From: Klebsormidium nitens
Taxonomy: Eukaryota > Plantae > Klebsormidiophyceae
NCBI GenBank assembly: GCA_000708835.1
Contig: DF237004.1
Coordinates: 7,480 to 71,479 of the forward strand
Length of the DNA stretch: 64,000 bases
Direction of reading: 5' to 3'
Shown here: positions 21,784 to 38,900 of the stretch, one piece after another
Position numbering within the stretch: the first letter of the stretch is position 1
Layout: every line of letters starts with the position of its first letter
Program-made: the position numbers and the translations under genes
Notes under the pieces: generated by a model
The model's input: only the letters and a program-made list of their open reading frames with translations
The model's database searches: none
Told to the model about the DNA's origin: nothing

Positions 21784-23258
21784 ATACGTCCAAGAAACGG
21801 ACAGGCTCTGTCAAGCATCCGTGCGGTTTTGTTTATGAGGAGCTGCTTATTCCAAGCGCAAGGCGGGTTTGCAGAATAAAGAGTTGACTGTGCATCAAAC
21901 ACGGACGCGTCATGCCAAGCGTGTAAGCTGATTGACGTGAATGCCGAGGAACGTCGAGTTTTGTCCAGCCAATAGGTTGGTCACATTCCAAGTTTTGCGG
22001 CACAAATCCATGCTTCATGTCAAGCATGCAACTATGGGTAGCCATTGAGTAATTGCGTTGGGGCAGCTGCACCCAGTGACTACGATGGGCTCTTCAATCC
22101 TGATTGCGAGTGCATCAAAATTACAAATTATTTTGAGTCCTTCTACTGAGTTAGTCGGCCATAAGGAATCACATGACGTGCGCTCATTGATGGCCTGATG
22201 GTAGTAGTAGTATATCAACAAGTCTGGTATGTTCATGATAGTTTATGCGCTGTACATACGAATTCGTATATCTCATGCACATGTGAACGGTGTCATTTGA
22301 CAGTTCGAGACATGGTCGAGCTCCTACAGCAGGCCGGAGCCAATCTACCTCTAAAGCAAGCATCGTGTGAATATTTGTCGCAAAGAACCGGGTCATGACA
22401 GTAGTATCGATCAAAATCAATCAAGGTATGGTATATGTAGAGTTTACTCTAGTACGAAACCCTGCGCGCGCCGGCCGGAAAAGGAAAGTCGATCAAAAAT
22501 GCAACATGCACTGGCCTAAAAAGATGATTAAGCATCTAACTGCATGCCAAGCACACCAACGGCATCAGGATATTGGCTTGCCTCTCTTTTACGAAGTAAA
22601 ATAGCAAGCTATTGCATTCGGGGCAACCGCGTGTCGGGCGACACTGTACGACGTGGCTCTGCGGAAGATAAGCATGTCCAGACTGGTGGTATTTCAACAT
22701 GCGTGGTGTTCGATACGAAAACGTACGCAGAATCCCCCTAAGGGAGGCGTCATTTTGAAGCCGTACCCCCCGTATTAACTGCTGTGGGGGGGGAGCCTAA
22801 AGCATCGGGTCAATGTTGAGGGTCGGAAGGGGGGGGAACCTACCAACTATGTGGCTGCGAAGCGGCCACATGGGGGGGGAACCCAAGCAGAAATGCAGCG
22901 GACCAGCATATGGAGGGGGGACTTGAGGCCTTCAGAGGCCTACTAACGCTGATGGGGGGGGGACTTGAAGAATTGGGACGGCCTGGACGGCGGCTGGCCC
23001 GCCCGGCCTGCCGGGCCGGCCGCAAACCCTTAAAGCCGCGGCCGGCCTATACTAGGATAAATGCCGCGCGTCCGATCGCGCACTTTCAATCAGCCCGAGC
23101 ACTCAGCTGCAGCATGCATGTACCGGCAGTGTCGAGTCTACAAGCTTGAAGTTGAAGTTGAAGACGGATCCGCACTGGCATTGTGCACCTTGCTGGCTGA
23201 GCAAGTCTTCCTGTAGTTGCTTTGAGGTGTACTTGCTGTAGCTTGGAACTGGGCAGCC

Positions 23259-26070
23259 ATGAAGAAAGCGTCAAATACGTTGCATGACTTCCTGAGCAAG
23301 CCCCAAGCAGGGCTGCAAACTGGTGGGAAGGGGGCAGGTGCTGGTAAAGACCGAGCACCCACTTACTTGGGCAAGGTCAATCTGAGCTGCCTAAGTGCAT
23401 CCGGGAAGAAGCCTGCAGCTCTTACAACCCTCTGTCCAACAAGGAAGCCTGACATCCCGCGCAGTGAGTCAGAGTTGGAGAAGCTGTTCCATGAAGCTCG
23501 CGACCAGCCCAACGCTCGCAAGACAGGTTCAAATGAGCTTAGGCATTTGCTGGCAACCTTTGTTACATGGGAAGAAGCCCTGCGCAAGGTAAAGGAGGAG
23601 CTGAAGCGCCGTACGGCTGAAGAGAAGAAGTGGAAGGCGGGTGCGCTGGAGCTGACCCCTGGGCTGTGGTGGAGCATGGCTGCCAACCGCAGAGCTGTAT
23701 CAACGTGGGAAGCAGAACTCACCAACCGGAAGGATCAGTACCAGAGGTATCTCCAGGAGTTGTACGACTCTGTCCTGGAGGAGCTTAACGCGGGAGCTGA
23801 CATGATCAAGTACAAGTGCACTTTGTCAGCTCGGTGAGTAACTTGCCAATCTCGCACACAACCTGGTAATGGTTAGCAGGTTGACTTCTGATCAGATGAC
23901 GCAGTTCTCTTCTTTGGATTCTGATACAACAGTTGGCAATATCACTTCATGACTGAACACTGTTTACAGTACCTAGTAGGACATGCATGAGAATCTGATC
24001 CGTGGTCAGTGCCACTCTGTTTCTTGGTGCTACTTGAAGACAAGGTTGCTTTCAGATTTTGAGGACGTTCAATTGCTTTCGGCCTGTCCCATATAATAGT
24101 TGCACATAGTCTAAAGGTGCTTCTTTTTGTGCAACATCCAGAATGTACAGGGACCAGATGTCATTTGCAATGTTCATTGCTTCAAAAGTGCCAAGGCAGC
24201 CAGCCTTTCATTTGAGCTTTCAAACTGATACAATTACATTGCTGCTTTTTGCAGGAGTATTCCGGCCTTTGTCAAGCAGAAGAGTCTGATTGACAAACAG
24301 CTGGACGATCTCCAGTCCTGGATCCGTCAGATGCAGCGCGACGAGAGCCGGTACTTGAAGGACAAGATGGCAAAGCGGAAGCTTGATGGGGTTTCGGTGG
24401 AGGGGGCTGTAGACGCTCCTGATCAGAAGAGGCTGCGAGCGCTTGAGAACTTCAAGGGGAAGTCGAGCAAGGGTCAGCTTGACATGGGCAAGGGCGAGAT
24501 TCTGATCCTCCTTCCTGAGCAGGATGAAGCGGTTGTCGCAAAGGGGTGGTATCGGGTGCAAAACGAGGAGGGTGCAGAGGGGCTTGCGCCGGTGGCCTGG
24601 TTGAAGGAGAGGAGTCCTTCCCCGCCTCGACGAGCCGCCAGCCCTGAGGCTGGTGACAGAGAAGGGAGTGTCAGTACGGCGCCTGCGCTGGCCCCCGGGA
24701 GCAGCCCCCCCCGCACGCAGGTTGGTCCTACAGAGGTACTCACTCCCACGTCCCGTCCAGTTTCACAGACCCCGTCAGGAGGGGTGGCTGTGAGTGAGAA
24801 GCCGGAGGGGGATTGGGAAATGGCTGGTACGGAGGCTGCAGAGGTCGAGAGACAGCGAGAAGCTGAGTCTGGCAGTCCCCGCGCTGACAGTGAACCGCAA
24901 TCCGGGAGCTTAAAGCTTCAGTTCTCGGAGAAGTCTTTATGAAGCCAGGAAGCCGCTGCCGGGGGAGGAGGCGGCTTGGGGAACGGGGAGGGTGGCGGCT
25001 TGGTTTTGAGAGAAGGGGGCGCATGTGGGGGCGCCAATCTGAGCGGAAGAGGCAGTGACTGCGCAGAAGCCAGCGCAGATGCTGAAGACTCCGCTGCAGA
25101 GAGTGAGGGCGAGGAGAGGACGGCGAAAGAGTCGGATGGTTCTTGGCTGGGGGTGCGGATTGTCCAATTGAGCAAAGGTTTGTTTGCGTCCTCAGCTCCT
25201 ATGGAGTGGGCGCAAGCAAAAGTCCTGCTTCGCAAGGCAATCAGTGATCCCAAGTTCAAGAGGCAAAGCTGGTGGAAGAGTTGTCGGCTGGTTAACATGA
25301 AAGGGGCGCTGGCAGCGATGGAGAGGGTTGATGGGTCAGATTCGGCAACGTTGGAGCTTTGGGAAGCATGGCATTGCTTGCAGTCGGTGGAGGGGTCAAA
25401 CAGAAGCGACTTTCAGAAAAATGCCCGAGCAAATTGCTGGAGAGCCTTGCTTTCCGTCGCCCCCTTCGTCGCCATTGTCATCGCTAGCAGTGACGACACC
25501 AGCTCGCATAGGACAATTCTCTTGCCTCGCAGCGGCGAGGTGGAGGTTTTTAGGGAGTTGCAGCAACATTTCAGGACTTCAGTAGAGCTTGATACCGCAG
25601 GAAGGTTGGCTAAGATTGCGGGTCTGCCGTTGAAAGATCTCCAACTCTTAGCAGGGTCAACGCAAGCCTCGAAAGTTTTGGACTACGCTCTAGGATTGGT
25701 TGTAGGAAAGAAGCAATTAGCCAGGCAGGTTGATGGGGTCAGTCTTCGTACGCTGCGTTCGCACACCAGGCAGACAGAGAGCGCTCTCGATGCCATGCCC
25801 AGCATCCTCAAAGAGGTAGTTGACGAGGTCAGCGGCGAGCGAGAGAGATTCATGGAGGTAGCGGAAAAAGCTGCTGCACGCGCACTAGACGCGCAGGATC
25901 AGGGAAGGGGTGTTCCTGCTGAACTTCTTGAAACAGCGGCGTTCGTAGCACAGCGGAAAGGGGAGATCAGAGAAGTTGGAAGCAAGGCATGGAGGGCGCT
26001 GGTGAGGAGGCGATTCAAGAAGCGTTTGGAGAACACCCCAGAGCTGAGGCATGTGGCACGGGGCCACCAG
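23259..26070 (+). CDS. Transposon ORF1: coiled-coil region, SH3-like domain, low-complexity linker and helical domain; one in-frame TGA
   Basis: Exon 23259-23833 (cg|gtgagt) joins exon 24255-26070 (tttgcag|g ... cag|gtaagt). The second exon is one reading frame of 605 codons broken only by TGA at 24940-24942. SH3-like segment at 24427-24612. Confidence 0.65.
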
Positions 26071-26254
26071 GTAAGTATCGAAAGCTTCCTGCTCGAAAGT
26101 GGATTGTCAAGCGTCAAGTTGCTGCATGTTCGAGTTTGCCTTGCCTTTCAATCTCAGTATTAGGGCTTGATTCGTTCAAATATTCGCAGCGATTTGGGTT
26201 TTAACAAGTCATTTTGCTCAAGTGAACTGTCTGGCTGCTTGAAGCAGCTAGTGC

Positions 26255-26326
26255 GCAGGGGTGTGCAATATGGTCTGGGTAGAAAGAGCAGCAGGGGTGT
26301 TCAATATGGTCTGGTTGGAAAGAGCA
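26255..26326 (+). repeat. 36-bp tandem duplication inside the transposon
   Basis: gcaggggtgtgcaatatggtctgggtagaaagagca followed by gcaggggtgttcaatatggtctggttggaaagagca. Confidence 0.85.
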
Positions 26327-26770
26327 GCTGGAGTTCAGTGCAGGGATTTGCAATCGAGCAATCAGTCTTTTTGGGATTTCAATTCTGCGCAGACTGCAGG
26401 CATGGGCATAGTGCACATCTCAGCGCCATCTTTTCTGCCTTTGCTTCAATGATAAAGCACCCCTTTCTTTCGAACACCTTGAAACCCCACTTTCACGAGT
26501 TTTTGTCTCAATGATCATGAGAAAGACACGCTTCTTGCTAGCGTCCCTGCTTTGAAGCTCCTTGTCCAGGTGTTTGACTGGCCCCCCTTGTTGACTGGCT
26601 CCAAAGTTTGCTCGGCACCTAGAGGAAATGAACTTGGTGTTTTCGGTCAACTCTTCTTGTAAACCCTCACAAACCCGGGAAACTTTTCTGCGGCCAACTC
26701 TAGGCCTAGTATTAGGGACTAGTTCAAAAGCTTTTTTTAGTATACATGGTGACTGATTGAGGCTTTGTTG

Positions 26771-29700
26771 ATGTGCAAGATCGCTGTCCATGTCAAGTAC
26801 CCCCACTTCAAGCCCGCGGTGGAGCAGCTCGTCATGCACATGAACGGCGGTCGGGCTGATGCCAAGCGGGCGTCAGTTTCGATCTACATGGGGAAGAGCA
26901 CCTGGAAGACGGTGGTCAAGAAGCTGGCTGACGAGGCGTCCATGGGTGATTTGGGAGGCGCTATCCGGGTCTCCGAGTCCACTCTGAAGAAGCATCGGAA
27001 GCGAGCCGATCGGTCCATCCAACCCAAGATAGCAGATCCTGCCGGGCAGGTGGATCTCTCCTCTCGCAAGGTGGCCAAGGTCCTCCTCCCCACGGAGGAT
27101 GAGCAACCAAACGGGTACATCATGAACAAAGCCCTGAAAGAGCTCGAGGCTTGGGCGGTTCTGAACTCATATTGGGTCAACACTGACAACACGTGAGAGT
27201 TTATGACCAGCTTCAGAGCCTTTTCTGCTTGTACTTCCACTGAGAAAAGTGAACGTAGTCTGTCTACTGGTCAGCTAGGAGGAAGTCAGGTTTTGATGGT
27301 GGAGTAGACAACCAGCATGCGTCCTTGTGTGTATATGACTGATTCTGTTTGCATACTTCCAAATCTGACCCATTCTTGTTGCGTGCTTTCAGTTACTGTT
27401 CGTCAGCGAGTAGAAAGCCAGGTTTGATGGTGGGTTTGACCATACTTCAATTCTGCCTGCTATTATTGTTGCATGTTCAGTTACTGGTTGCTGCGCAATT
27501 CCTTCTTGATCCTTTTTCACTTATCCATAACCTTTGCGCAGGGACGACAAAGCAAACCTGCTCCTCGACCTGATATACTCGAAGAAGACCCTCCTCCAAC
27601 TCCTCTACCAGCAGCGGCCCAGTGCTGAGTTCAACCTGGACGCATACGACAAGCAAGTGAAAGCTCACATGCACGATCCCCCGACTGCTGCGGGGTATAA
27701 GCTGGTCCTCAGCTCTCATCTACTCCTCCACCTAGGGACGGATGCTGTGACGGAAGCCGTACCTCAAGGTAAATTAGCAGGGTGCCGTTTGTGTCTCGTG
27801 CTCAAAGAGTAATTGCTTTAACTGGTCTCAGCTTATTCTGACATGCTGGTTTTGCTGGTCCGTGACAGTCACATGTTCGACATGCAGGCGTCCTTTTCTG
27901 GATAAAGATGGTACACTGTCGCTCGTTTGAAGTCTGTGCTTGTTGCGCTTGCACGTTGTCTTGTTTTTCGGTCCAAAATCCGGACAATTGGAGCATTTGG
28001 TATATGCAAACCATGCTGAGTGCTGAATGCGTTTCAAACTTGTGTGGCAAGGTGGACCGCGTCCGGTGCTGCTCTGGGATGTCTCTGGTCGGAAGCACAC
28101 GCGCGACGGCCTCATGGTCGTGTACGTCAAGGGGATGAAACTGCAGCGATCCACAGCGTACGAACACACGCGCAACATGCTCCACAACCTGGAAGCGTCG
28201 CCTGAGCTGTACCAGGTGCGAAGCTGTGCTAATTTAGCATCAGGAGATTTCACCGTCAAACTGATTGCTGTAAACAGTGGAACGAAAGGCCCTTGTACTT
28301 TCTGCTTCATCTTAGTTCAGACGTTTGTCCTAATGCTATGGCTTGTCTGATTCGGATCGGCAACACAATAAGGCGTCTGAAGTGCTCGATTGCAGCTCTC
28401 AGAATCATCAGCATAAGTATTGGGCTGTCCACAGATGTCTTTCCGCACCCAAAAGGCTCCCGAGATTCAGACATGCACGGCGCTGTTGCCACCAATATCA
28501 GCTGAAACCACCCGCAATTGATGTCCCAACAGCAGTCAGCCCCATGGACGATAGATCAGGATGTGGTGTTCTCCTTCACATCCAAGGTATGGGATGTCTT
28601 GAATCGTGATTGATATCCTGATTCCATGTGCACACATTCAGGTTCCAGGAACGGAGAAGACAAAGCCCATCCTGGTCAACATGGTGGACGGCGGTGGCGA
28701 CGAGAACCCCCGCTTCTACGCCAAAAAGATGGCTTCCGCTGTGCTATTCATGCGCGGCGGGTATGAGCTACTCATTTGCGCGACGCGCGCTGCCGGCTGG
28801 AGTGCGTACAACCCGGTGGAGCGCGGGCAGTGCTACCTGACCCAGGCGTTAGACGGCTGCATTTTCGAGTCGGACTTCTACGGCAAAGTGCGGTTGAAGG
28901 CGGATGGTACAGCGGCTTCTGATGCGGTTCGTCGCATTTCACCATCACTCTTTGAAAAGTCCCAGCTGATTCCTCGCTTGCCCGTTTTAGCACGTGTTGC
29001 TTTGCAGGGCCCCTACAAGCTGGTTTTGCAGTCTCATGCTTGTGGGTGTAGGTGGCAGATTGTATTGCAGGCTGTGCGTAGGCCTAGATTTGTTGAGCCT
29101 GAAGCCTTTCTCAAAGCACTTGAGCTTCACCAGGAAAGGTTTGCTCGATCCCTACAAGCTGGCTTCGCAGTCTCAGGCTGGTGGGCGTTTGTGGCAGCTT
29201 GTGTTTGAGGCTCTCCGCTGTCCTTGGTCTGTGGAGTCTGAAGCCTTTCAAAGCACTGAAATGCCCCCCGAGGAAGGATTGACACGCCTGGGGTTGATCG
29301 TGTGCCGTCAAAACAGTTCATTAATGTTTTCACTTGAGTGGCACGACGATAAGATCTCTTCATATCTGCAGGACGCTAAGCTGGAAGGACGAAACTTCGA
29401 GTACGCGGTGGAAAAGTGCCGGGCCACGTTAAACAGATCAGCGGCCTTTGAGAGGTAAGCAGGTCGAACGCTTGCTCTTCAATACAAGGCTGTTTTGAGA
29501 CTCAGGGCAAGCAGCCTTGACAAAGATTGTCTAGTTGATAAGCCGGTGATTCAGATGCTCTTGATTCAGCTGTGGCGCACATTGATTTGCTGCACTATTG
29601 ACCGCAGAATCAGGGCCAGACTCTGATGGTGAATATTCTATGCTCATGAACACAAATCTGGTTATCTAGGTTGTACACAACTGTTTCGGATCCTCTGCAA

Positions 29701-30497
29701 ACAGACCTATACTAACGTGCATCATGGTTGTTTTTTGCAGGGAGATCAAGGCTGTCGTCCCCCCCCCACCTCAAAGCAGCTCCCCGTTTGTATATATTGA
29801 CCACGAGGCGTTTGAGAGCTACCGCAAGAGTAGCGGGGAAGGCGGGTGCGGATGCCAGACGGAAGACCGGTGCTCGAGCGCTCGGTGCCGGAAGTGCTGG
29901 GATCAGGGTCTGCCGTGTACGAAGCGCTGCAAGTGTCAAGGGAAGTGCGGCAATCCACATCTGATGCCGCTCCCCGAAGACCTGGCTTGCTATCCCGTGG
30001 AGAATCGCGCGCTCGTCTCCCTCGAGGAGATTGTTGCGCAGCTAACTCCGCGAGATGTTGAGTTTTGGGCGTTGAAACATGGCAGGTTCAGGCACTACTG
30101 GTTCCAGTACAAATTGTGCGATCTCGCGGAGGCGGAGAGTTGCTGGTACTGTAGTCGGTTCGGCGAAAGGCAGATACCTACTCTGTCTTTCTTCCCCATC
30201 GTTTCCGTCCCTGACGGTGAAGGGAAGTACGTCGACCTGAAAGAGCGTGCGGAATTGGTGAAGAAAAGGGATCCAAGTGCGGAGGCCTTCTTTGCCGACT
30301 CTGCGCTCCCCTCAGTGATTCTGGCCACCGCCTGGCAAGCGTCACCAACACTGACTGACGAAGCATTGTCCAAGTTAGTTGACGCCACAAATCTTCAGAG
30401 GGCTTCAATTGTAAATTATTTTAGGAAGAAGAATGAAGCGCCCAGAGAAAACAATGCTGCTGACAGAGACAGAATTGTAGAAGATGGTGTCGAATAA
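26771..30497 (+). CDS. Spliced Zator-like DDE transposase with CXC and homeodomain-like C-terminal modules
   Basis: Exons 26780 (or ATG 26771)-27192, 27542-27768, 28052-28215, 28642-28887, 29372-29454, 29741-30497, phases consistent. Candidate catalytic motifs TDDKA (27543), VDGGGDENPR (D at 28687) and SAYNPVER (E at 28819; 43 residues between D and E). Further motifs HDPPT..YKLV and LEGRNFEYA. Family assignment is from recalled motifs. Confidence 0.8.
29011..29260 (+). repeat. Diverged ~139-bp tandem duplication in a transposase intron
   Basis: ccctacaagctgg at 29011 and 29150; both copies continue through similar sequence to ctgaagcctttc. Confidence 0.8.
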
Positions 30498-32490
30498 CAT
30501 AACATTATACAAATTGCACTCGCAACTTGAGTCTCACGTACGGATGGAGGCTAATAAATCTGCTTGTATCAAGAAGATGGTTCGATGCTGTTTGGAATCG
30601 CAATAAATTAGCGCGTGATGTGCAGCGGTTCATCTCACTTGCGTCTGTCATACCTAGCTAGTATATATGAAATTGATTACATGTTCGAGAGAATGTATGG
30701 TGACATTTGCTACGATCTCATTGGGTCCTCGGTCACTCAGCACTGCCAAGCATAATATATACTAATATCATTCATACATGGTTCGACTGCATGATGTCGT
30801 GCATCATTAACAAGAGCTATACATGCTAATTCAAGAAAGGCAAGGCTTGGCGACATATTTGGAAAGCGGTCTTGATTTATGGCCATGCAGATTGAAGAAC
30901 ATGGTATGATGTTCTCTTTTTACGCGGTAGCCACCTGGATGATGAAAATGAGATACGAGTGCAAGATTGTGGTCAGGATACAGATGTGACATGGATTGTA
31001 TATTGCAAGCATGTATTTAAGAGCAGCTGTCCTGACTGCTGTGGCGGTTCATGCGCAGGTTCATATGCATGCCGATTACTACGGTACCATGCCCTACACT
31101 CAAAGTGACAATGTGACATGGCTGCGTGTGGCTTGCATGATCATACGGTCCAAAAAAAAAAACTCAAAGTGACATGGGGGGGGGACCTGAGGGTCGAAGA
31201 TTAGGGTTTGTGCGATGAAGGGGGGGGTACTTGAGACCTATACAATACTTCTCGGCATGGGGGGGGGACTTGAGGCTTAAGCCAACGGGCCAAGTCAACA
31301 TGGGGTGAAACCTGAAAGCTCATACAAAAACCCCTCAGCAGTTAATACGGGGGGTACGGCTTCAAAATGACGCTTCCCTTAAATAGTCCAGACCATGTTT
31401 ACGTCCAAGCCTAGACTGCCCCGCGCGGCTGCGCAGAATTAAATGCTACTCGGAATCGTTCGCGGACGCGAAGTTGCCGCCCCAAAAATCCGTAACGATG
31501 TAACGTTTGGCCTCGATTTCTCCGAACAGGCCTGCTCTAAAGCTGCCACGTTGCATGGCGAGGTCAAAATAGCTGCCACGTCCTGATTCGTACCGCTGCC
31601 CAACATCTGACACTGTGAAGCACCCCGGGCTCTGAACGTCGAAATCAAAATTCAAAACACCCTTATTTGCGATGGACTCCTTCAGTACTGCTTGCCTTGG
31701 GATTTCAGAAGGTATTAAAGTGCCCGGAAGGTAGAGTGGCGAGTAGCCTGGTACGCACTGTAGAGATACCCACGGTGCGTACCAGAAGATGGTGTACGGA
31801 TTACGTCTAACGTGTGCGCGCTCGCGCAAGACTTCCATGGATAGAGCCACGTACAAGATATTAAAACGCCAAACAATGCCCTTTTAAAATTTTGCCCAGT
31901 CGCACCACAGAGAGGCAAGCCCCCGCCGCCCTTCTGGGCGGTCTATCATGTACATGGCCCGGGTGATTGCACATGCAGTTTTACGTCTCAAATCCAAATC
32001 TAAGTGGCGTGCATGTACATACGCAGCTGCGTGATAGTACACTGAGTCAAGGTAGCCGCTGGGGGTGCTGCCGGCCTGCCTGCGGATGCAACATTCCATA
32101 TAATACTTCCGAGTCCGATCGATACGCGAGGGCAGCAACTTCAACATAAAACAAGAGTTCATTTGATGCGCGGCATCAAACATGCGTTGGGAGCTTGCCT
32201 TCCGCTCAAGCATTTGGAAACACTTGACAATATAAGCGCACCTACTTCTCTGCTTCATCTATGGAACATGTTTTGGACCATGCGGATTTTCGCGCCAGTT
32301 TGCGTGCTGAGTCTACTCGTCGACAAGCTTGAGTTGCTAACTTTTGGCCCGTCGATTCCGGATCTACTGCAAAGGCAGAAAGCTTCTTCTCTGTAAGGTG
32401 CTCGAAACTTCAGGTCTGCTATTTGGCGGCGGCCGGTGCTCCTGGAACTGGTGTCCGAGCTAGCCCTATGACGATCCCGTACATGATGAC

Positions 32491-35903: not shown

Positions 35904-38900
35904 CTACTCAGGCTTCCTCGCAGTCAAGAATATGTGCAACCTGTTGGTGTTCTGTGTGTATTCTACAAACCCGCACCTCGTCAGCAAGTCCCTGAGCTCA
36001 GGCTCCGTGAAGGGACGCACTGGCAGGGCCTGTACAAGCGGAGGGGCGGAACGAAATTCAGCGTATCGTACATGGCGGAAGTTCGTTATCTAAACCCCTC
36101 TTCCTGACGAAAAGGTCGCTCGCGCTTTGCTGCCAACGTTTGAACCGACCGCTCAAACCGGCTGCTTCCGGCCAAACGGACAAGCCCTAAGCACTTCCAC
36201 CGGTCACCCAACCCGACCTGCCACCTTAGCCCAGCCTTAACCACCCGGCCACCCGACCCGACCCCTGACCTCACCCCTTAACTTTACCCCCGCCAGACCC
36301 TTTTCATTCCCCGGGCCTATCAATCGGCCTTTCTAACAGACAGAATGATGAACTGCCGGTTCCGTGTGCAACAGAAGTCGACGAGGCCGCAAGCGCGGGC
36401 CAAGTCTCGGAGCTCGTCCTCCTTCCACTGCCTGTACGCCGAGTTCGGCCCAAACGTCTGCAGGCAGACACGTGGCTACGCTCAGAGTCCACTACGTGGC
36501 AGGCGGNNNNNNNNNNNNNNNNNNNNNNNNNNNNNNNNNNNNNNNNNNNNNNNNNNNNNNNNNNNNNNNNNNNNNNNNNNNNNNNNNNNNNNNNNNNNNN
36601 NNNNNNNNNNNNNNNNNNNNNNNNNNNNNNNNNNNNNNNNNNNNNNNNNNNNNNNNNNNNNNNNNNNNNNNNNNNNNNNNNNNNNNNNNNNNNNNNNNNN
36701 NNNNNNNNNNNNNNNNNNNNNNNNNNNNNNNNNNNNNNNNNNNNNNNNNNNNNNNNNNNNNNNNNNNNNNNNNNNNNNNNNNNNNNNNNNNNNNNNNNNN
36801 NNNNNNNNNNNNNNNNNNNNNNNNNNNNNNNNNNNNNNNNNNNNNNNNNNNNNNNNNNNNNNNNNNNNNNNNNNNNNNNNNNNNNNNNNNNNNNNNNNNN
36901 NNNNNNNNNNNNNNNNNNNNNNNNNNNNNNNNNNNNNNNNNNNNNNNNNNNNNNNNNNNNNNNNNNNNNNNNNNNNNNNNNNNNNNNNNNNNNNNNNNNN
37001 NNNNNNNNNNNNNNNNNNNNNNNNNNNNNNNNNNNNNNNNNNNNNNNNNNNNNNNNNNNNNNNNNNNNNNNNNNNNNNNNNNNNNNNNNNNNNNNNNNNN
37101 NNNNNNNNNNNNNNNNNNNNNNNNNNNNNNNNCCGAAGAGTTGACACTGCTTGCTCCTGCTGACCGGTGCAAACCCCGCACAACCGTCCAACAAAGAGCT
37201 GAACTTCCACACGGTACAAAAAGAAAGGCTTTGGAGTGATCTGCTTACGCGGCTCAACGTGACTCGCCCTTGTCTGGTTGCAAACCCAAAACGTCCCACG
37301 TTCCAACAGCAGCTGCCTGACACCTTTTGGGAGTTGCCCAAGTTCGCGAGACTTACGATACATGAACATTTCAGGAGTGACTATTTCGAAACCAGAACCC
37401 TAAGACCTTGAAATCGTCAAAGCCTCAAAACCTTATAAGCCACTGAAGGTGACAAGCCAGCCCGTTTCCCAAGCGTTACACTGGATTGCAAAGAAACCCA
37501 CAGAACGCGCGACAAATGAAGAAGGCGACGACAAACTAGAGGCGCGGTAATGTTGAGCCCACCTGGCGGGCTTGCCGTGCAAGCGGGCTGGGGATGGGGG
37601 CACGGGGCGCCAAGAAAGTACTCGCAACGAAGACGCCCCCAGGTCGTAGAACTCGGCTGATCTCCGCTACCTGCCGACCGCAAAAGACCGCATGAGTAAT
37701 CAGATTGCCACTAACTCCGTGGAAAAGCAGAATTAGAGGACGCACACACGTGACTTGCTCTGCAGATTTTAAAGGAGACTCCGCTTCACTGTCAACCTAC
37801 CCGCTCGGCAAAACGCAAAGGAGTCTCCGATGTCGAAATTCTATTCCCAAAACCTCCATGCTTACTTTTCAGCAAGGCAACCCCTCATAACATGCTAACT
37901 ACGCCAAGCAGCCAGGGCCGATAGCCCGGGGTCCAGTGAACCAGTTTTCTTAACCTAGAGGGTCCTAGACCACGTCTTCGTTCGGCTACAGAGTAATACA
38001 CTCAACCGGACACTCAACCGTCCAGATCTTTCCAACATGCGAAGTCGAACCCCCTGACTAGGAACAGGCTTCCCAGGACGTGACTTACTGCTGAGCTGGG
38101 TGACGGCCAGCAATGAAGCGCGGCCCCCGCGTGCACTCCGTCAATCGATCCCGTCTCAAAGGGCAGCCGCCCGACGTCTGCTCGGACCAGCGCAAGGTTT
38201 CTGCGGCAGCATGATAAGAGTGGTTCAGAGTCTGGGAGTCGTCCGTTCTGACCGATTTCAGTCTGATCGCTTTGAGTATTTCCCGACAAACAAACAGTCG
38301 GGCAACACCTCGGCTAGCGCCAAGTCGGCTGGAGTCTGATCTTCGAACAGAAGCTATCCACAGAGAGAGTTTGATCGCTTGCTCGTACATCCGACTATCA
38401 AGTGTCCGTAGCCGTGCCCCAAGTTCGCGTTCCAATTGGAGAAGTCTCGCGTCTAGTTTGAGCAGACCTAGGCTTCATCAAGCCCCTGGCTCCTTGTGAA
38501 TAGAGTCCCGCATCCTCCACGAAGTGGAAACTGCCGCGTGTCCGTTTGTTCAACTAGCATGGGCGCAAAACTCACGCGTCGTCGAGCGTCCGGTCCTGGC
38601 GAATGAAGTCGCGCGTTTGTACGAGCATGCTTTCCGAAAAGTCGGAGCCGATGACGGCAGAGTACTTTCCGCTCGAAGCGAAGCGACGCGTAAAGAGCCC
38701 GCTGCCGCAGCTGACGTCAAGGAGGACGCCGCCGGCCGCAGGCTCAAGGTAGCGCTGCGCCATTACGAACTGCAAGGAGACGGTTGCGGGAATATTGATA
38801 AGCGGACTATAACGAAGCTCTCGGACTGGTTTATGCTTTGTAGAGGGTTGTGAAGAAAGAAATAATGAAAAGGAGGTAGCGCTGCGCCATCACAAACTGC

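What the first reader, a model, noticed from the sequence alone, without database searches (positions are those of the whole stretch)
22741..31379. Large, multi-intron Zator-like transposon with a multidomain coding cassette
Near-perfect 44-bp TIRs enclose an intact-looking DDKA / DGGGDENPR / NPVER triad encoded over six exons. The upstream ~800-codon ORF ends in a phase-0 donor (26070) that matches a phase-0 AAG acceptor (26780). Joining all eight exons would give an ~1,430-aa protein: coiled coil, SH3, helical domain, transposase, CXC and homeodomain-like tail. I recall Zator elements as compact and mainly from animals, protists and fungi, so this architecture in a streptophyte may be undescribed.
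Basis: partly seen in the sequence, partly recalled or inferred. Interest (0 to 1): 0.82.

Follow-up and report, generated by a model that had tools for sequence, protein, structure and literature searches.

The report
Zator transposon with conserved internal stop
This is a real, nearly intact 8.6-kb cut-and-paste jumping gene of the rare Zator type in the green alga Klebsormidium nitens. Its eight-exon gene puts an SH3-containing module in front of the transposase, and the two are separated by a stop codon that diverged copies all keep.

Summary
The element at 22739-31381 is real. It has 48-nt inverted ends (2 mismatches) that start GGG and are flanked by TAA/TTA.

All splice phases fit. A diverged K. 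nitens copy conserves only the exons (overall dN/dS about 0.10). Intronless relatives run straight across the junctions, including the predicted 26070/26780 one.

The catalytic core is homologous to bacterial ISAzo13/TP36 transposases, the defining feature of Zator. hhalign gives 94.4% probability (E 8.5e-8) with D, D and E aligned. The nearest named fold clusters are all PF07592, and 4 of 95 relatives hit PF07592 directly. The GGG ends and 3-bp TAA/TTA duplications match bacterial ISAzo13 copies and published amphioxus Zator-1.

The SH3 domain, a conserved Cys-rich domain and a homeodomain-like tail are supported.

One correction: the "~800-codon ORF" is not open. An in-frame TGA sits at 24940-24942. 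It is kept at the same codon in two other diverged copies, and coding continues after it with no start codon in the window and one of those copies. So the fused ~1,438-codon protein needs stop-codon readthrough or a stop-removing splice. Neither is shown.

This scan had already reported Zator-type elements elsewhere in this genome. Verdict: new variant of a known kind.

The parts
22739..22741 (.). Left 3-bp target-site flank, TAA
   Evidence: The related full copy L127 has a perfect TAA/TAA duplication. Bacterial ISAzo13 copies have TAA or TTA repeats. Published Zator-1 has TAA/TTA (PMC12905397).
22742..22789 (+). Left terminal inverted repeat, starts 5'-GGGAGGCG
   Evidence: 51-nt arms including the TWA flank, 96% complementary; unique to the two ends, 0 matches expected by chance.
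23259..23833 (+). Exon 1. ATG at 23259. Charged helical (coiled-coil-like) region. Ends in phase 2 at a GTGAGT donor.
   Evidence: Conserved in L127 (59% aa) and L128 (72% aa). pN 0.15 against pS 0.62 versus L128. Only weak Pfam matches to coiled-coil families.
24255..24939 (+). Exon 2, first part: SH3 domain (about 24436-24591), then a Pro/Ser/Glu-rich disordered tail ending ...SL
   Evidence: Pfam SH3_1 E 2.8e-5, 24.0 bits, cut-off 22.9. All 30 PDB sequence hits are SH3 domains, best E 3.1e-5. Conserved in L127 and L128. pN<pS.
24940..24942 (+). In-frame TGA, conserved at the homologous codon in three diverged family copies
   Evidence: Window ...SEKSL*SQE, L128 ...SDYSL*SED, L127 ...SQNSL*TEA. 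The nucleotide block TTATGAA is identical in all three.
24943..26070 (+). Exon 2, second part: Gly/Ser/acidic linker with no in-frame stop or Met (to about 25140), then the conserved helical N-terminal domain of the transposase. Ends in phase 0 at a GTAAGT donor.
   Evidence: Residues about 119-376 align with Cymbomonas P0011, and 221-375 with P0177. dN/dS 0.09 versus L128.
26780..27192 (+). Exon 3: helix-turn-helix DNA-binding region of the transposase
   Evidence: Aligned with the winged-HTH region of ISAzo13 transposases in hhalign. 52% identical to the contiguous sequence of intronless P0177.
27542..27768 (+). Exon 4: first catalytic Asp (27543-27545, 'DDKA')
   Evidence: D aligned with the invariant D186 of ISAzo13.
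28052..28215 (+). Exon 5: beta3/alpha1 of the RNase H-like core ('STAYEHTRNML')
   Evidence: Conserved at 85% nt in L001 while the flanking introns are not alignable. Matches 23 homologous proteins.
28642..28926 (+). Exon 6: second Asp (28687-28689, DGGGDENPR) and Glu (28819-28821, NPVER), 44 residues apart
   Evidence: Aligned with ISAzo13 D279 and E322, which are 43 apart. 147 database proteins match this exon.
29372..29454 (+). Exon 7
   Evidence: The junction 'ASDA|DAKLEGRNFEYAVEKCR' matches the continuous 'TDADAELEKRNHAYAVEKCR' of homologues and the model P0002.
29741..30497 (+). Exon 8: Cys-rich CXC-like domain (about 29847-29960), a second Cys/His-containing region, a homeodomain-like three-helix tail (about 30309-30437) and the stop codon
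   Evidence: Cys36/38/44 are invariant and Cys49/52/69 nearly so in 23 homologues. Pfam TCR match is weak, E 0.29. AF2 model pLDDT 80. The top ~40 listed Foldseek PDB hits are all homeodomains, target-normalised TM 0.7-0.8 for the compact single-homeodomain hits, but E 0.3-2. dN/dS 0.07 versus L001.
31331..31378 (-). Right terminal inverted repeat, ends ...CGCTTCCC-3'
   Evidence: The paralogous copy L001 ends with the same ...TTCCC|TTA.
31379..31381 (.). Right 3-bp flank, TTA (differs from the left TAA at the middle base)

Best explanation
What it is: one nearly intact copy of a Klebsormidium family of Zator-superfamily DNA transposons. These are the eukaryotic relatives of bacterial ISAzo13/TP36 insertion sequences.

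How it moves (inferred from the family): a DDE transposase with an RNase H-like core (D at 27543, D at 28687, E at 28819) binds the GGG-initiated 48-nt inverted ends. Binding would use its helix-turn-helix region, and perhaps the C-terminal homeodomain-like tail and Cys-rich zinc domain. The enzyme cuts the element out and pastes it into TWA sites, duplicating 3 bp.

How it is expressed: the element carries one eight-exon transcription unit with two conserved parts.
- Part 1 is a 420-codon front module (helical/coiled-coil region, SH3 domain, proline-rich tail). It ends at a TGA that all three diverged copies keep.
- Part 2 is the transposase. It continues in the same frame with no start codon of its own.

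Most likely the front module is made by default, and the transposase is made only as a C-terminal extension of it. That would happen either by occasional readthrough of the TGA or by an alternative splice that removes it. This would limit the transposase dose, as Gag/Gag-Pol does in retroelements and OrfA/OrfAB does in bacterial IS3 elements.

Shown here: ends, flanks, exon structure, homology, selection, conservation of the stop.
Inferred: activity, roles of the accessory domains, and how the stop is passed.
For: Superfamily:
- hhalign of a 95-sequence family alignment against 37 Pfam-verified ISAzo13 transposases: probability 94.4%, E 8.5e-8, 283 columns, with D/D/E aligned.
- AF2 model of the intact homologue's core has pLDDT 76. 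Every named cluster listed among the nearest ESM-Atlas models carries PF07592, with TM by row 0.28-0.69.
- 4 of 95 family members hit PF07592 directly (best E 8e-6), and no other transposase family appears.
- GGG ends and TAA/TTA 3-bp flanks match three bacterial ISAzo13 copies, published amphioxus Zator-1 (PMC12905397) and the stated 3-bp TSD of Zator and ISAzo13 (PMC10045372).

Gene model:
- All phases are consistent.
- Only the exons and the right-hand terminal region with its TIR (31220-31381) align with paralogue L001; the introns do not.
- Overall dN/dS is 0.10.
- Intronless homologues L003 and L004 are collinear across the junctions.
- K. nitens models P0002 and P0180 use the same junctions.

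Front module belongs to the element:
- The exon order is the same in L127 and L128.
- pN is well below pS in those exons.

Conserved stop and translation beyond it:
- The stop sits at the same codon in all three copies.
- After the stop there are 0 in-frame stops, against 1-10 in the other frames, in all three copies.
- The 20 codons before the first downstream Met change mostly synonymously.
- The window and L127 have no in-frame Met in the linker.
Against: - No RNA or protein data were available, so neither transcription, the splice junctions nor passage of the TGA is shown directly.
- The stop context (UUA UGA AGC / ACC) is not a known leaky context.
- The 90 nt after the stop fold no better than shuffled sequence, z about 0.
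- No GT-AG intron spanning the stop is conserved between the three copies.
- The window's 3-bp flanks differ (TAA versus TTA) and the TIRs have 2 mismatches, so recent mobility is not shown.
- The other copies found are damaged: L128 has two frameshifts; L127 has a TGG>TAG change, a stop in exon 1 and a frameshift in exon 8.
- No Repbase Zator transposase was available for a direct phylogeny.
- SH3 support is modest, and Pfam does not detect the L127 version at E below 0.05.
Confidence: 0.62

Rival explanations
1. Two separate products, never fused. The TGA is the ordinary terminator of a 420-aa accessory protein (coiled coil + SH3). The transposase is made from its own mRNA (internal promoter or alternative first exon) or from a non-AUG start in the linker. 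This would resemble two-ORF transposons such as PIF/Harbinger or MuDR.
For: - The stop is conserved, and so is the short tail before it (L-x-L...SL), as expected for a real C-terminus.
- There is no leaky context and no downstream RNA structure.
- No conserved stop-removing intron was found.
- Being in the same frame has a 1-in-3 prior and was inherited once.
Against: - The linker after the stop is kept free of stops only in the shared frame in three diverged copies.
- Coding-type substitution extends upstream of the first Met.
- The window and L127 have no in-frame AUG between the stop and that conserved stretch.
- No homologue was found with a transposase beginning at that point.
Confidence: 0.28
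2. Decayed family. The TGA is an old inactivating mutation inherited by all sampled copies, which spread afterwards only by using a transposase supplied in trans.
For: - Every other copy sampled carries further lesions.
- The window copy has mismatched flanks.
Against: - The three lineages differ by saturated synonymous change yet keep pN well below pS both upstream and downstream of the stop. Dead copies would not show this.
- The codon before the stop (TTA) and the base after it are also invariant.
Confidence: 0.06
3. The element belongs to another superfamily with similar ends: PIF/Harbinger (also 3-bp TWA duplications and two ORFs) or Tc1/mariner (TA duplication).
For: - TAA/TTA flanks and a two-part coding layout resemble PIF/Harbinger.
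- The window's own flanks can also be read as TA + AGGG...CCCT + TA.
- The best PDB fold hits are mariner-type catalytic domains, though weak.
Against: - No DDE_Tnp_4, Plant_tran, DDE_1, DDE_3 or Transposase_1 Pfam hit in the exons or in 95 relatives. PF07592 is the only transposase family found.
- hhalign and the fold search point to ISAzo13.
- The TA reading fails in L127, where only the 3-bp TAA reading gives a direct repeat.
Confidence: 0.03

Closest known systems
Zator superfamily of eukaryotic DNA transposons (Bao et al. 2009; e.g. amphioxus Zator-1)
   Same: - DDE transposase related to bacterial TP36/ISAzo13.
- Terminal inverted repeats.
- 3-bp target duplications that are TAA or TTA (PMC12905397, PMC10045372).
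- Not detected by Pfam models in most members (PMC5751038), as seen here.
- Relatives occur in Mucoromycota, Cnidaria, Rotifera and arthropods.
   Different: - The host is a streptophyte alga. My literature searches found no report of Zator in Klebsormidium or other green plants.
- The element is 8.6 kb with seven introns.
- It has a conserved coiled-coil/SH3 front module.
- A conserved in-frame TGA sits between that module and the transposase.
- Direct grouping with Repbase Zator proteins could not be tested.
Bacterial ISAzo13 (TP36, Pfam PF07592) insertion sequences
   Same: - Aligned D/D/E residues, with D2-E spacing of 43 in ISAzo13 and 44 here.
- An HTH region before the core.
- GG(G/A) termini.
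- 3-bp TAA/TTA direct repeats.
   Different: - About 11% sequence identity.
- The bacterial elements are about 1.3 kb with one ~400-aa ORF.
- They have no introns, no SH3 module and no Cys-rich or homeodomain-like C-terminus.
- The D1-D2 spacing here is about 145 residues, against 93 in ISAzo13.
Gag/Gag-Pol readthrough in retroelements and OrfA/OrfAB recoding in bacterial IS1/IS3 elements
   Same: An upstream non-catalytic module ends at a signal that most ribosomes obey. The catalytic part lies downstream without its own start, so it would be made as a minor fusion product.
   Different: - Recoding is only inferred here.
- The context is not a known leaky one, and no stimulatory RNA structure was detected.
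- IS1/IS3 use -1 frameshifting, whereas here the frame is unchanged.
- I know of no eukaryotic DNA transposon shown to use stop-codon readthrough (own knowledge, not searched exhaustively).
The other Zator-type element of this genome reported by this scan (s1-261770: B-box/B-box/DDE/PHD, about 1,900 aa)
   Same: Same genome, same superfamily call, and a long multi-intron transposase gene with extra domains.
   Different: The accessory domains differ: SH3, CXC and a homeodomain-like tail here, against B-box and PHD there. I did not examine that element.

Membership tests
Zator superfamily | DDE transposase homologous to bacterial TP36/ISAzo13 transposases (PF07592) | tested here: met
   hhalign 94.4%, E 8.5e-8, catalytic residues aligned. 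The nearest named fold clusters are all PF07592. 4 of 95 relatives hit PF07592, best E 8e-6.
Zator superfamily | 3-bp target-site duplication (TAA/TTA in published Zator-1) | tested here: met
   Perfect TAA/TAA in the full family copy L127. The window copy has TAA/TTA, one mismatch. Literature.
Zator superfamily | Terminal inverted repeats bounding the element | tested here: met
   48-nt TIRs with 2 mismatches. Related TIRs are present in L127 and L001.
Zator superfamily | Transposase core clusters with reference (Repbase) Zator transposases in a phylogeny | not testable with these tools
   No Repbase sequences are held. The only indirect support is that relatives occur in taxa where Zator is reported.
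PIF/Harbinger | IS5-like DDE domain (Pfam DDE_Tnp_4 / Plant_tran) and a Myb-like second ORF | tested here: not met
   No such Pfam hit in any exon or in 95 relatives. Only the TWA duplication is shared.
Tc1/mariner | TA target duplication and a Pfam DDE_1/DDE_3/Transposase_1 core | tested here: not met
   The TA reading fails in L127. No such Pfam hits. PDB mariner matches are weak, E about 1e-2.
SH3 domain | Sequence match to the SH3 profile above Pfam's gathering score | tested here: met
   SH3_1 24.0 bits against a cut-off of 22.9, E 2.8e-5. 30 of 30 PDB hits are SH3. The L127 version is not detected at E below 0.05.
Tesmin/TSO1 CXC domain | Match to Pfam TCR (PF03638) above the gathering score | tested here: not met
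   E 0.29 and 11.9 bits against a cut-off of 23.5; best among relatives 0.0085. It is a conserved Cys-rich domain with a C-x-C pattern, but membership in TCR is not shown.
Homeodomain fold | Three-helix bundle superposable on homeodomains | tested here: inconclusive
   The top ~40 listed Foldseek PDB hits are all homeodomains. The best compact matches (engrailed, DUX4-HD2) align 42 residues at rmsd 0.7-0.8 A with target-normalised TM 0.7-0.8. E is only 0.3-2. Pfam Homeodomain E 0.67.
Programmed stop-codon readthrough | Stop conserved among relatives, with in-frame coding sequence continuing after it | tested here: met
Programmed stop-codon readthrough | Known leaky context or stimulatory downstream RNA structure | tested here: not met
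   The context is UGA-AGC or UGA-ACC. Fold z-scores are -0.22, -0.06 and -0.08. No Rfam match, including SECIS.
Programmed stop-codon readthrough | Direct detection of the extended protein or of ribosomes beyond the stop | not testable with these tools
   No RNA-seq, Ribo-seq or proteome data are accessible here.

The most novel reading that the evidence does not exclude
A eukaryotic cut-and-paste DNA transposon regulates its transposase by translational recoding. A conserved UGA makes the SH3/coiled-coil protein the default product. A rare readthrough product, SH3 module fused to transposase, is the active enzyme. This would be a Gag/Gag-Pol-like dosage control not described for DNA transposons of eukaryotes.
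Probability: 0.3. Interest if true: 0.8.

Novelty: new variant of a known kind. Interest (0 to 1): 0.55.

Why it matters
Zator is one of the rarest and least studied DNA-transposon superfamilies. I found no published record of it in green plants or their algal relatives.

This family gives three things:
- A near-intact reference copy with a homology-supported eight-exon gene model.
- Clear conservation of end sequence and TWA target between bacterial ISAzo13 and a eukaryotic descendant.
- An unusual expression layout: a conserved accessory SH3 module joined to the transposase through a conserved stop.

If the stop is read through or spliced out in a regulated way, it would be a new example of self-limitation in a DNA transposon. 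It can be tested directly with existing K. nitens cultures and RNA data.

Tried and rejected
- Pfam and NCBIfam on single exons and on the gene model P0002 found no transposase family. Ten long homologues also gave none.
- tblastn of the core against plasmids gave nothing useful.
- A profile word search with A1 returned only its own members.
- A candidate exon at 28403-28586, which I first derived by hand, was rejected. It is not conserved in L001, and exon 5 joins exon 6 in phase without it.
- The TA-duplication reading of the ends was rejected using L127.
- +1 or -1 frameshifting, or AUGA stop-start coupling, at the TGA was rejected. The downstream coding frame is the same as the upstream one, and the overlapping AUG opens only 7-39-codon ORFs that are not conserved.
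- Selenocysteine is judged unlikely. No SECIS or other Rfam match was found in 22000-32200.
- An SH3-like domain at the N-terminus of Cymbomonas P0011 is not supported.
- The metagenome scan with the SH3 exon gave only a 22-residue low-complexity match.
- I did not build or search the joined spliced protein. All searches were run exon by exon by reference, or with database proteins.
Full report
**Source.** The window is Klebsormidium nitens. Paralogous copies of the element lie on contigs DF237613.1 and DF238546.1 of assembly GCA_000708835.1. An earlier report of this scan on the same window (s1-310305) also names the species.

**Ends.** An inverted repeat of 51 nt, 96% complementary, lies at 22739-22789 and 31331-31381. 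Its core occurs only at these two places in the window, with none expected by chance.
- Both arms begin TAAGGG.
- In the full copy L127 (a 232-kb contig of JGI metagenome 3300060284), the ends read TAA|GGGTACGG...CCTTACCC|TAA. That is a perfect 3-bp direct repeat outside GGG...CCC termini.
- The second K. nitens copy ends ...TTCCC|TTA.
- The window therefore has 48-nt TIRs with two mismatches and flanks TAA/TTA. That is a 3-bp TWA duplication with one mismatch.
- A TA-duplication reading fits the window but not L127.

**Gene model.** I derived the model from stop-free segments and the sequence. Every junction is GT-AG and in phase.

| Exon | Coordinates |
|---|---|
| 1 | 23259-23833 |
| 2 | 24255-26070 |
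| 3 | 26780-27192 |
| 4 | 27542-27768 |
| 5 | 28052-28215 |
| 6 | 28642-28926 |
| 7 | 29372-29454 |
| 8 | 29741-30497 |

Independent support for the model:
- Against the diverged K. nitens copy L001, BLASTN aligns only exons 3-8 (75-87% identity) and the right-hand terminal region with its TIR. The introns do not align.
- Exon-by-exon counts give dN/dS 0.02-0.17, and 0.10 overall.
- The intact 896-aa homologue P0152 (locus L003) has the exon 3-8 equivalents in one frame. The intronless homologue in L004/L005 runs collinearly from exon 2b through the first part of exon 6 in one frame, then has a frameshift inside the exon-6 equivalent and continues through exon 8 in a second frame.
- The official K. 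nitens models of the other copy use the same joins. P0002 reads ...NTDNT|DDKANLL and ...AAFD|REIKAVV. P0180 reads ...RHVARGHQ|VAIHVKYPHFK.
It falls inside a motif (RGH-x-IAVH-x-K-Y/F-P-x-FK) that is continuous in P0177 and in Cymbomonas P0011.
All searches used single exons by reference or database proteins.

**Superfamily.** Pfam and NCBIfam see nothing in the exons. This agrees with a published remark that Zator cores lack detectable similarity to Pfam domains (PMC5751038).
- A full HMMER search with the K. nitens model P0002 found 165 relatives at E up to 1e-3. They include proteins from Cymbomonas tetramitiformis, a thrips and a springtail.
- I aligned 95 of these sequences (A1).
- I fetched bacterial and archaeal ISAzo13 genes by a DNA pattern. 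I checked 10 of them against Pfam (PF07592, E 1e-128 to 1e-142) and aligned 37 (A2).
- hhalign of A1 against A2 gives probability 94.4%, E 8.5e-8 over 283 columns. It runs from the HTH region to beyond the catalytic Glu. 'sDDKA' pairs with 'SVDtKKK', 'vDGGpDENPR' with 'tADgGGSNgxR', and 'SAxNxVER' with 'SKWNKIEHR'.
- An AlphaFold model of the intact homologue's core has pLDDT 76. In the ESM Atlas its nearest matches are unnamed eukaryotic clusters, and among named clusters only PF07592 ones. PDB matches are weak and of the mariner/integrase RNase H type.
- Four of the 95 relatives hit PF07592 directly, and no other transposase family appears.
- Three bacterial ISAzo13 copies have GG(G/A) termini and TAA or TTA 3-bp repeats. 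This is the same end and target pattern as the alga's element.
- Amphioxus Zator-1 is published with TAA and TTA duplications (PMC12905397). Zator and ISAzo13 are both stated to make 3-bp duplications (PMC10045372).
- PIF/Harbinger shares the TWA target but is excluded by the protein evidence.

**Accessory domains.**
- *SH3.* Pfam SH3_1 is just above its cut-off, and all 30 PDB sequence hits are SH3 domains. The region is conserved in L127 and L128, although Pfam does not see the L127 version.
- *Helical domain (exon 2b).* It is shared with P0177 and Cymbomonas P0011.
- *Exon 8.* It matches 43 database proteins. An alignment of 23 shows a conserved Cys cluster (GGCGC...C...C..C...PC..RC.C) and a second Cys/His region.
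- *C-terminal tail.* The exon 8 model has pLDDT 80. Its three C-terminal helices match homeodomains in all of the top ~40 listed Foldseek hits, at E values that are not significant on their own.
- The coiled-coil label for exon 1 rests only on weak Pfam hits and composition.

**The internal stop.** The '~800-codon ORF' contains an in-frame TGA at 24940-24942. Two further copies carry the complete front half in the same order: L127, and L128 (K. nitens DF238546.1, probably the 5' half of the copy whose 3' half is L001).
- Both have a TGA at the homologous codon. The window reads SEKSL*SQE, L128 reads SDYSL*SED, and L127 reads SQNSL*TEA. The nucleotides TTATGAA are identical in all three.
- The front exons are under purifying selection. 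Versus L128, dN/dS is 0.12 for exon 1 and 0.16 for the SH3 part. Versus L127, pN is 0.27-0.31 against pS 0.70-0.79.
- After the stop, the Gly/Ser/acidic linker has no stop in the shared frame but 1-10 in each other frame, in all three copies.
- The 20 codons before the first downstream Met (SWLG.R..QLS..LF.S.AP) change largely synonymously.
- L127's extra stop there is a TGG-to-TAG change of a conserved Trp.
- The window and L127 have no in-frame Met in the linker.
- Translation of the transposase part must therefore enter from upstream, or from a non-AUG start.
- I found no leaky context, no downstream structure (z about 0), no SECIS or other Rfam match and no conserved stop-spanning intron.
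- The annotators' model on L128 spans the stop and is 36 codons shorter than the open span. It must therefore splice out 108 nt, and the only GT-AG fit is 1611-1718. That is a prediction, not evidence.
- Other agents of this scan report conserved leaky UGA codons in retrotransposons of this genome. I did not test those.

**State of the copy.** Apart from the conserved TGA, the window copy has no frameshift or stop in any exon. The other copies have extra lesions. L127 also lacks intron 4, because its exons 4 and 5 are contiguous.

**Verdict.** The architecture is real but bipartite: a conserved SH3 front module and a transposase separated by a conserved stop. How that stop is passed is the open and most interesting question. 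This scan had already reported Zator-type elements elsewhere in this genome (s1-261770 and s1-339160), so the superfamily's presence here is not new to the scan. I found no published report of it in green algae or plants.

Noticed in passing
L004:214-4551 and L005:1-4245: An intronless homologue from two independent ENA metagenome assemblies is split into three overlapping ORFs (242, 770 and 444 aa, 1,456 aa in total). The frame change inside the exon-6 equivalent is the same in both samples. This could be a shared lesion or a programmed frameshift.
   Followed up: partly
L127:12463-12834: The related full copy has exons 4 and 5 contiguous in one frame. So intron 4 of the window copy (27769-28051) is absent there, which is intron gain or loss within one transposon family.
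   Followed up: partly
L128 (DF238546.1, ends in exon 3 at residue 104) and L001 (DF237613.1, starts in exon 3 at residue 106): These two short K. nitens contigs look like the two halves of one element copy separated by an assembly gap.
   Followed up: no
window 29011-29275 and 26255-26328: There is a 139-nt tandem duplication (1.9 copies, 75% matches) inside intron 6 and a 36-nt tandem repeat (2.1 copies) inside intron 2 of the element.
   Followed up: no
L023:2767-4084, L059:4541-5865, L075:6523-7848: Bacterial ISAzo13 copies show GG(G/A)...(C/T)CC termini and 3-bp TAA or TTA direct repeats. This is the same end and target pattern as the algal element.
   Followed up: yes
L128:1250-2278: The K. 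nitens annotation has a 306-aa model that spans the conserved TGA and must remove 108 nt. The only GT-AG fit is 1611-1718. It looks like a gene predictor splicing around the stop.
   Followed up: partly
L127:10001-10957 (protein P0179): The JGI record names this transposase N-terminal ORF 'ribosomal protein L17', which looks like a mis-annotation.
   Followed up: no
window 36001-38000: G+C drops to 0.38 against about 0.50 elsewhere in the window. This is near the methyltransferase locus treated by another report.
   Followed up: no
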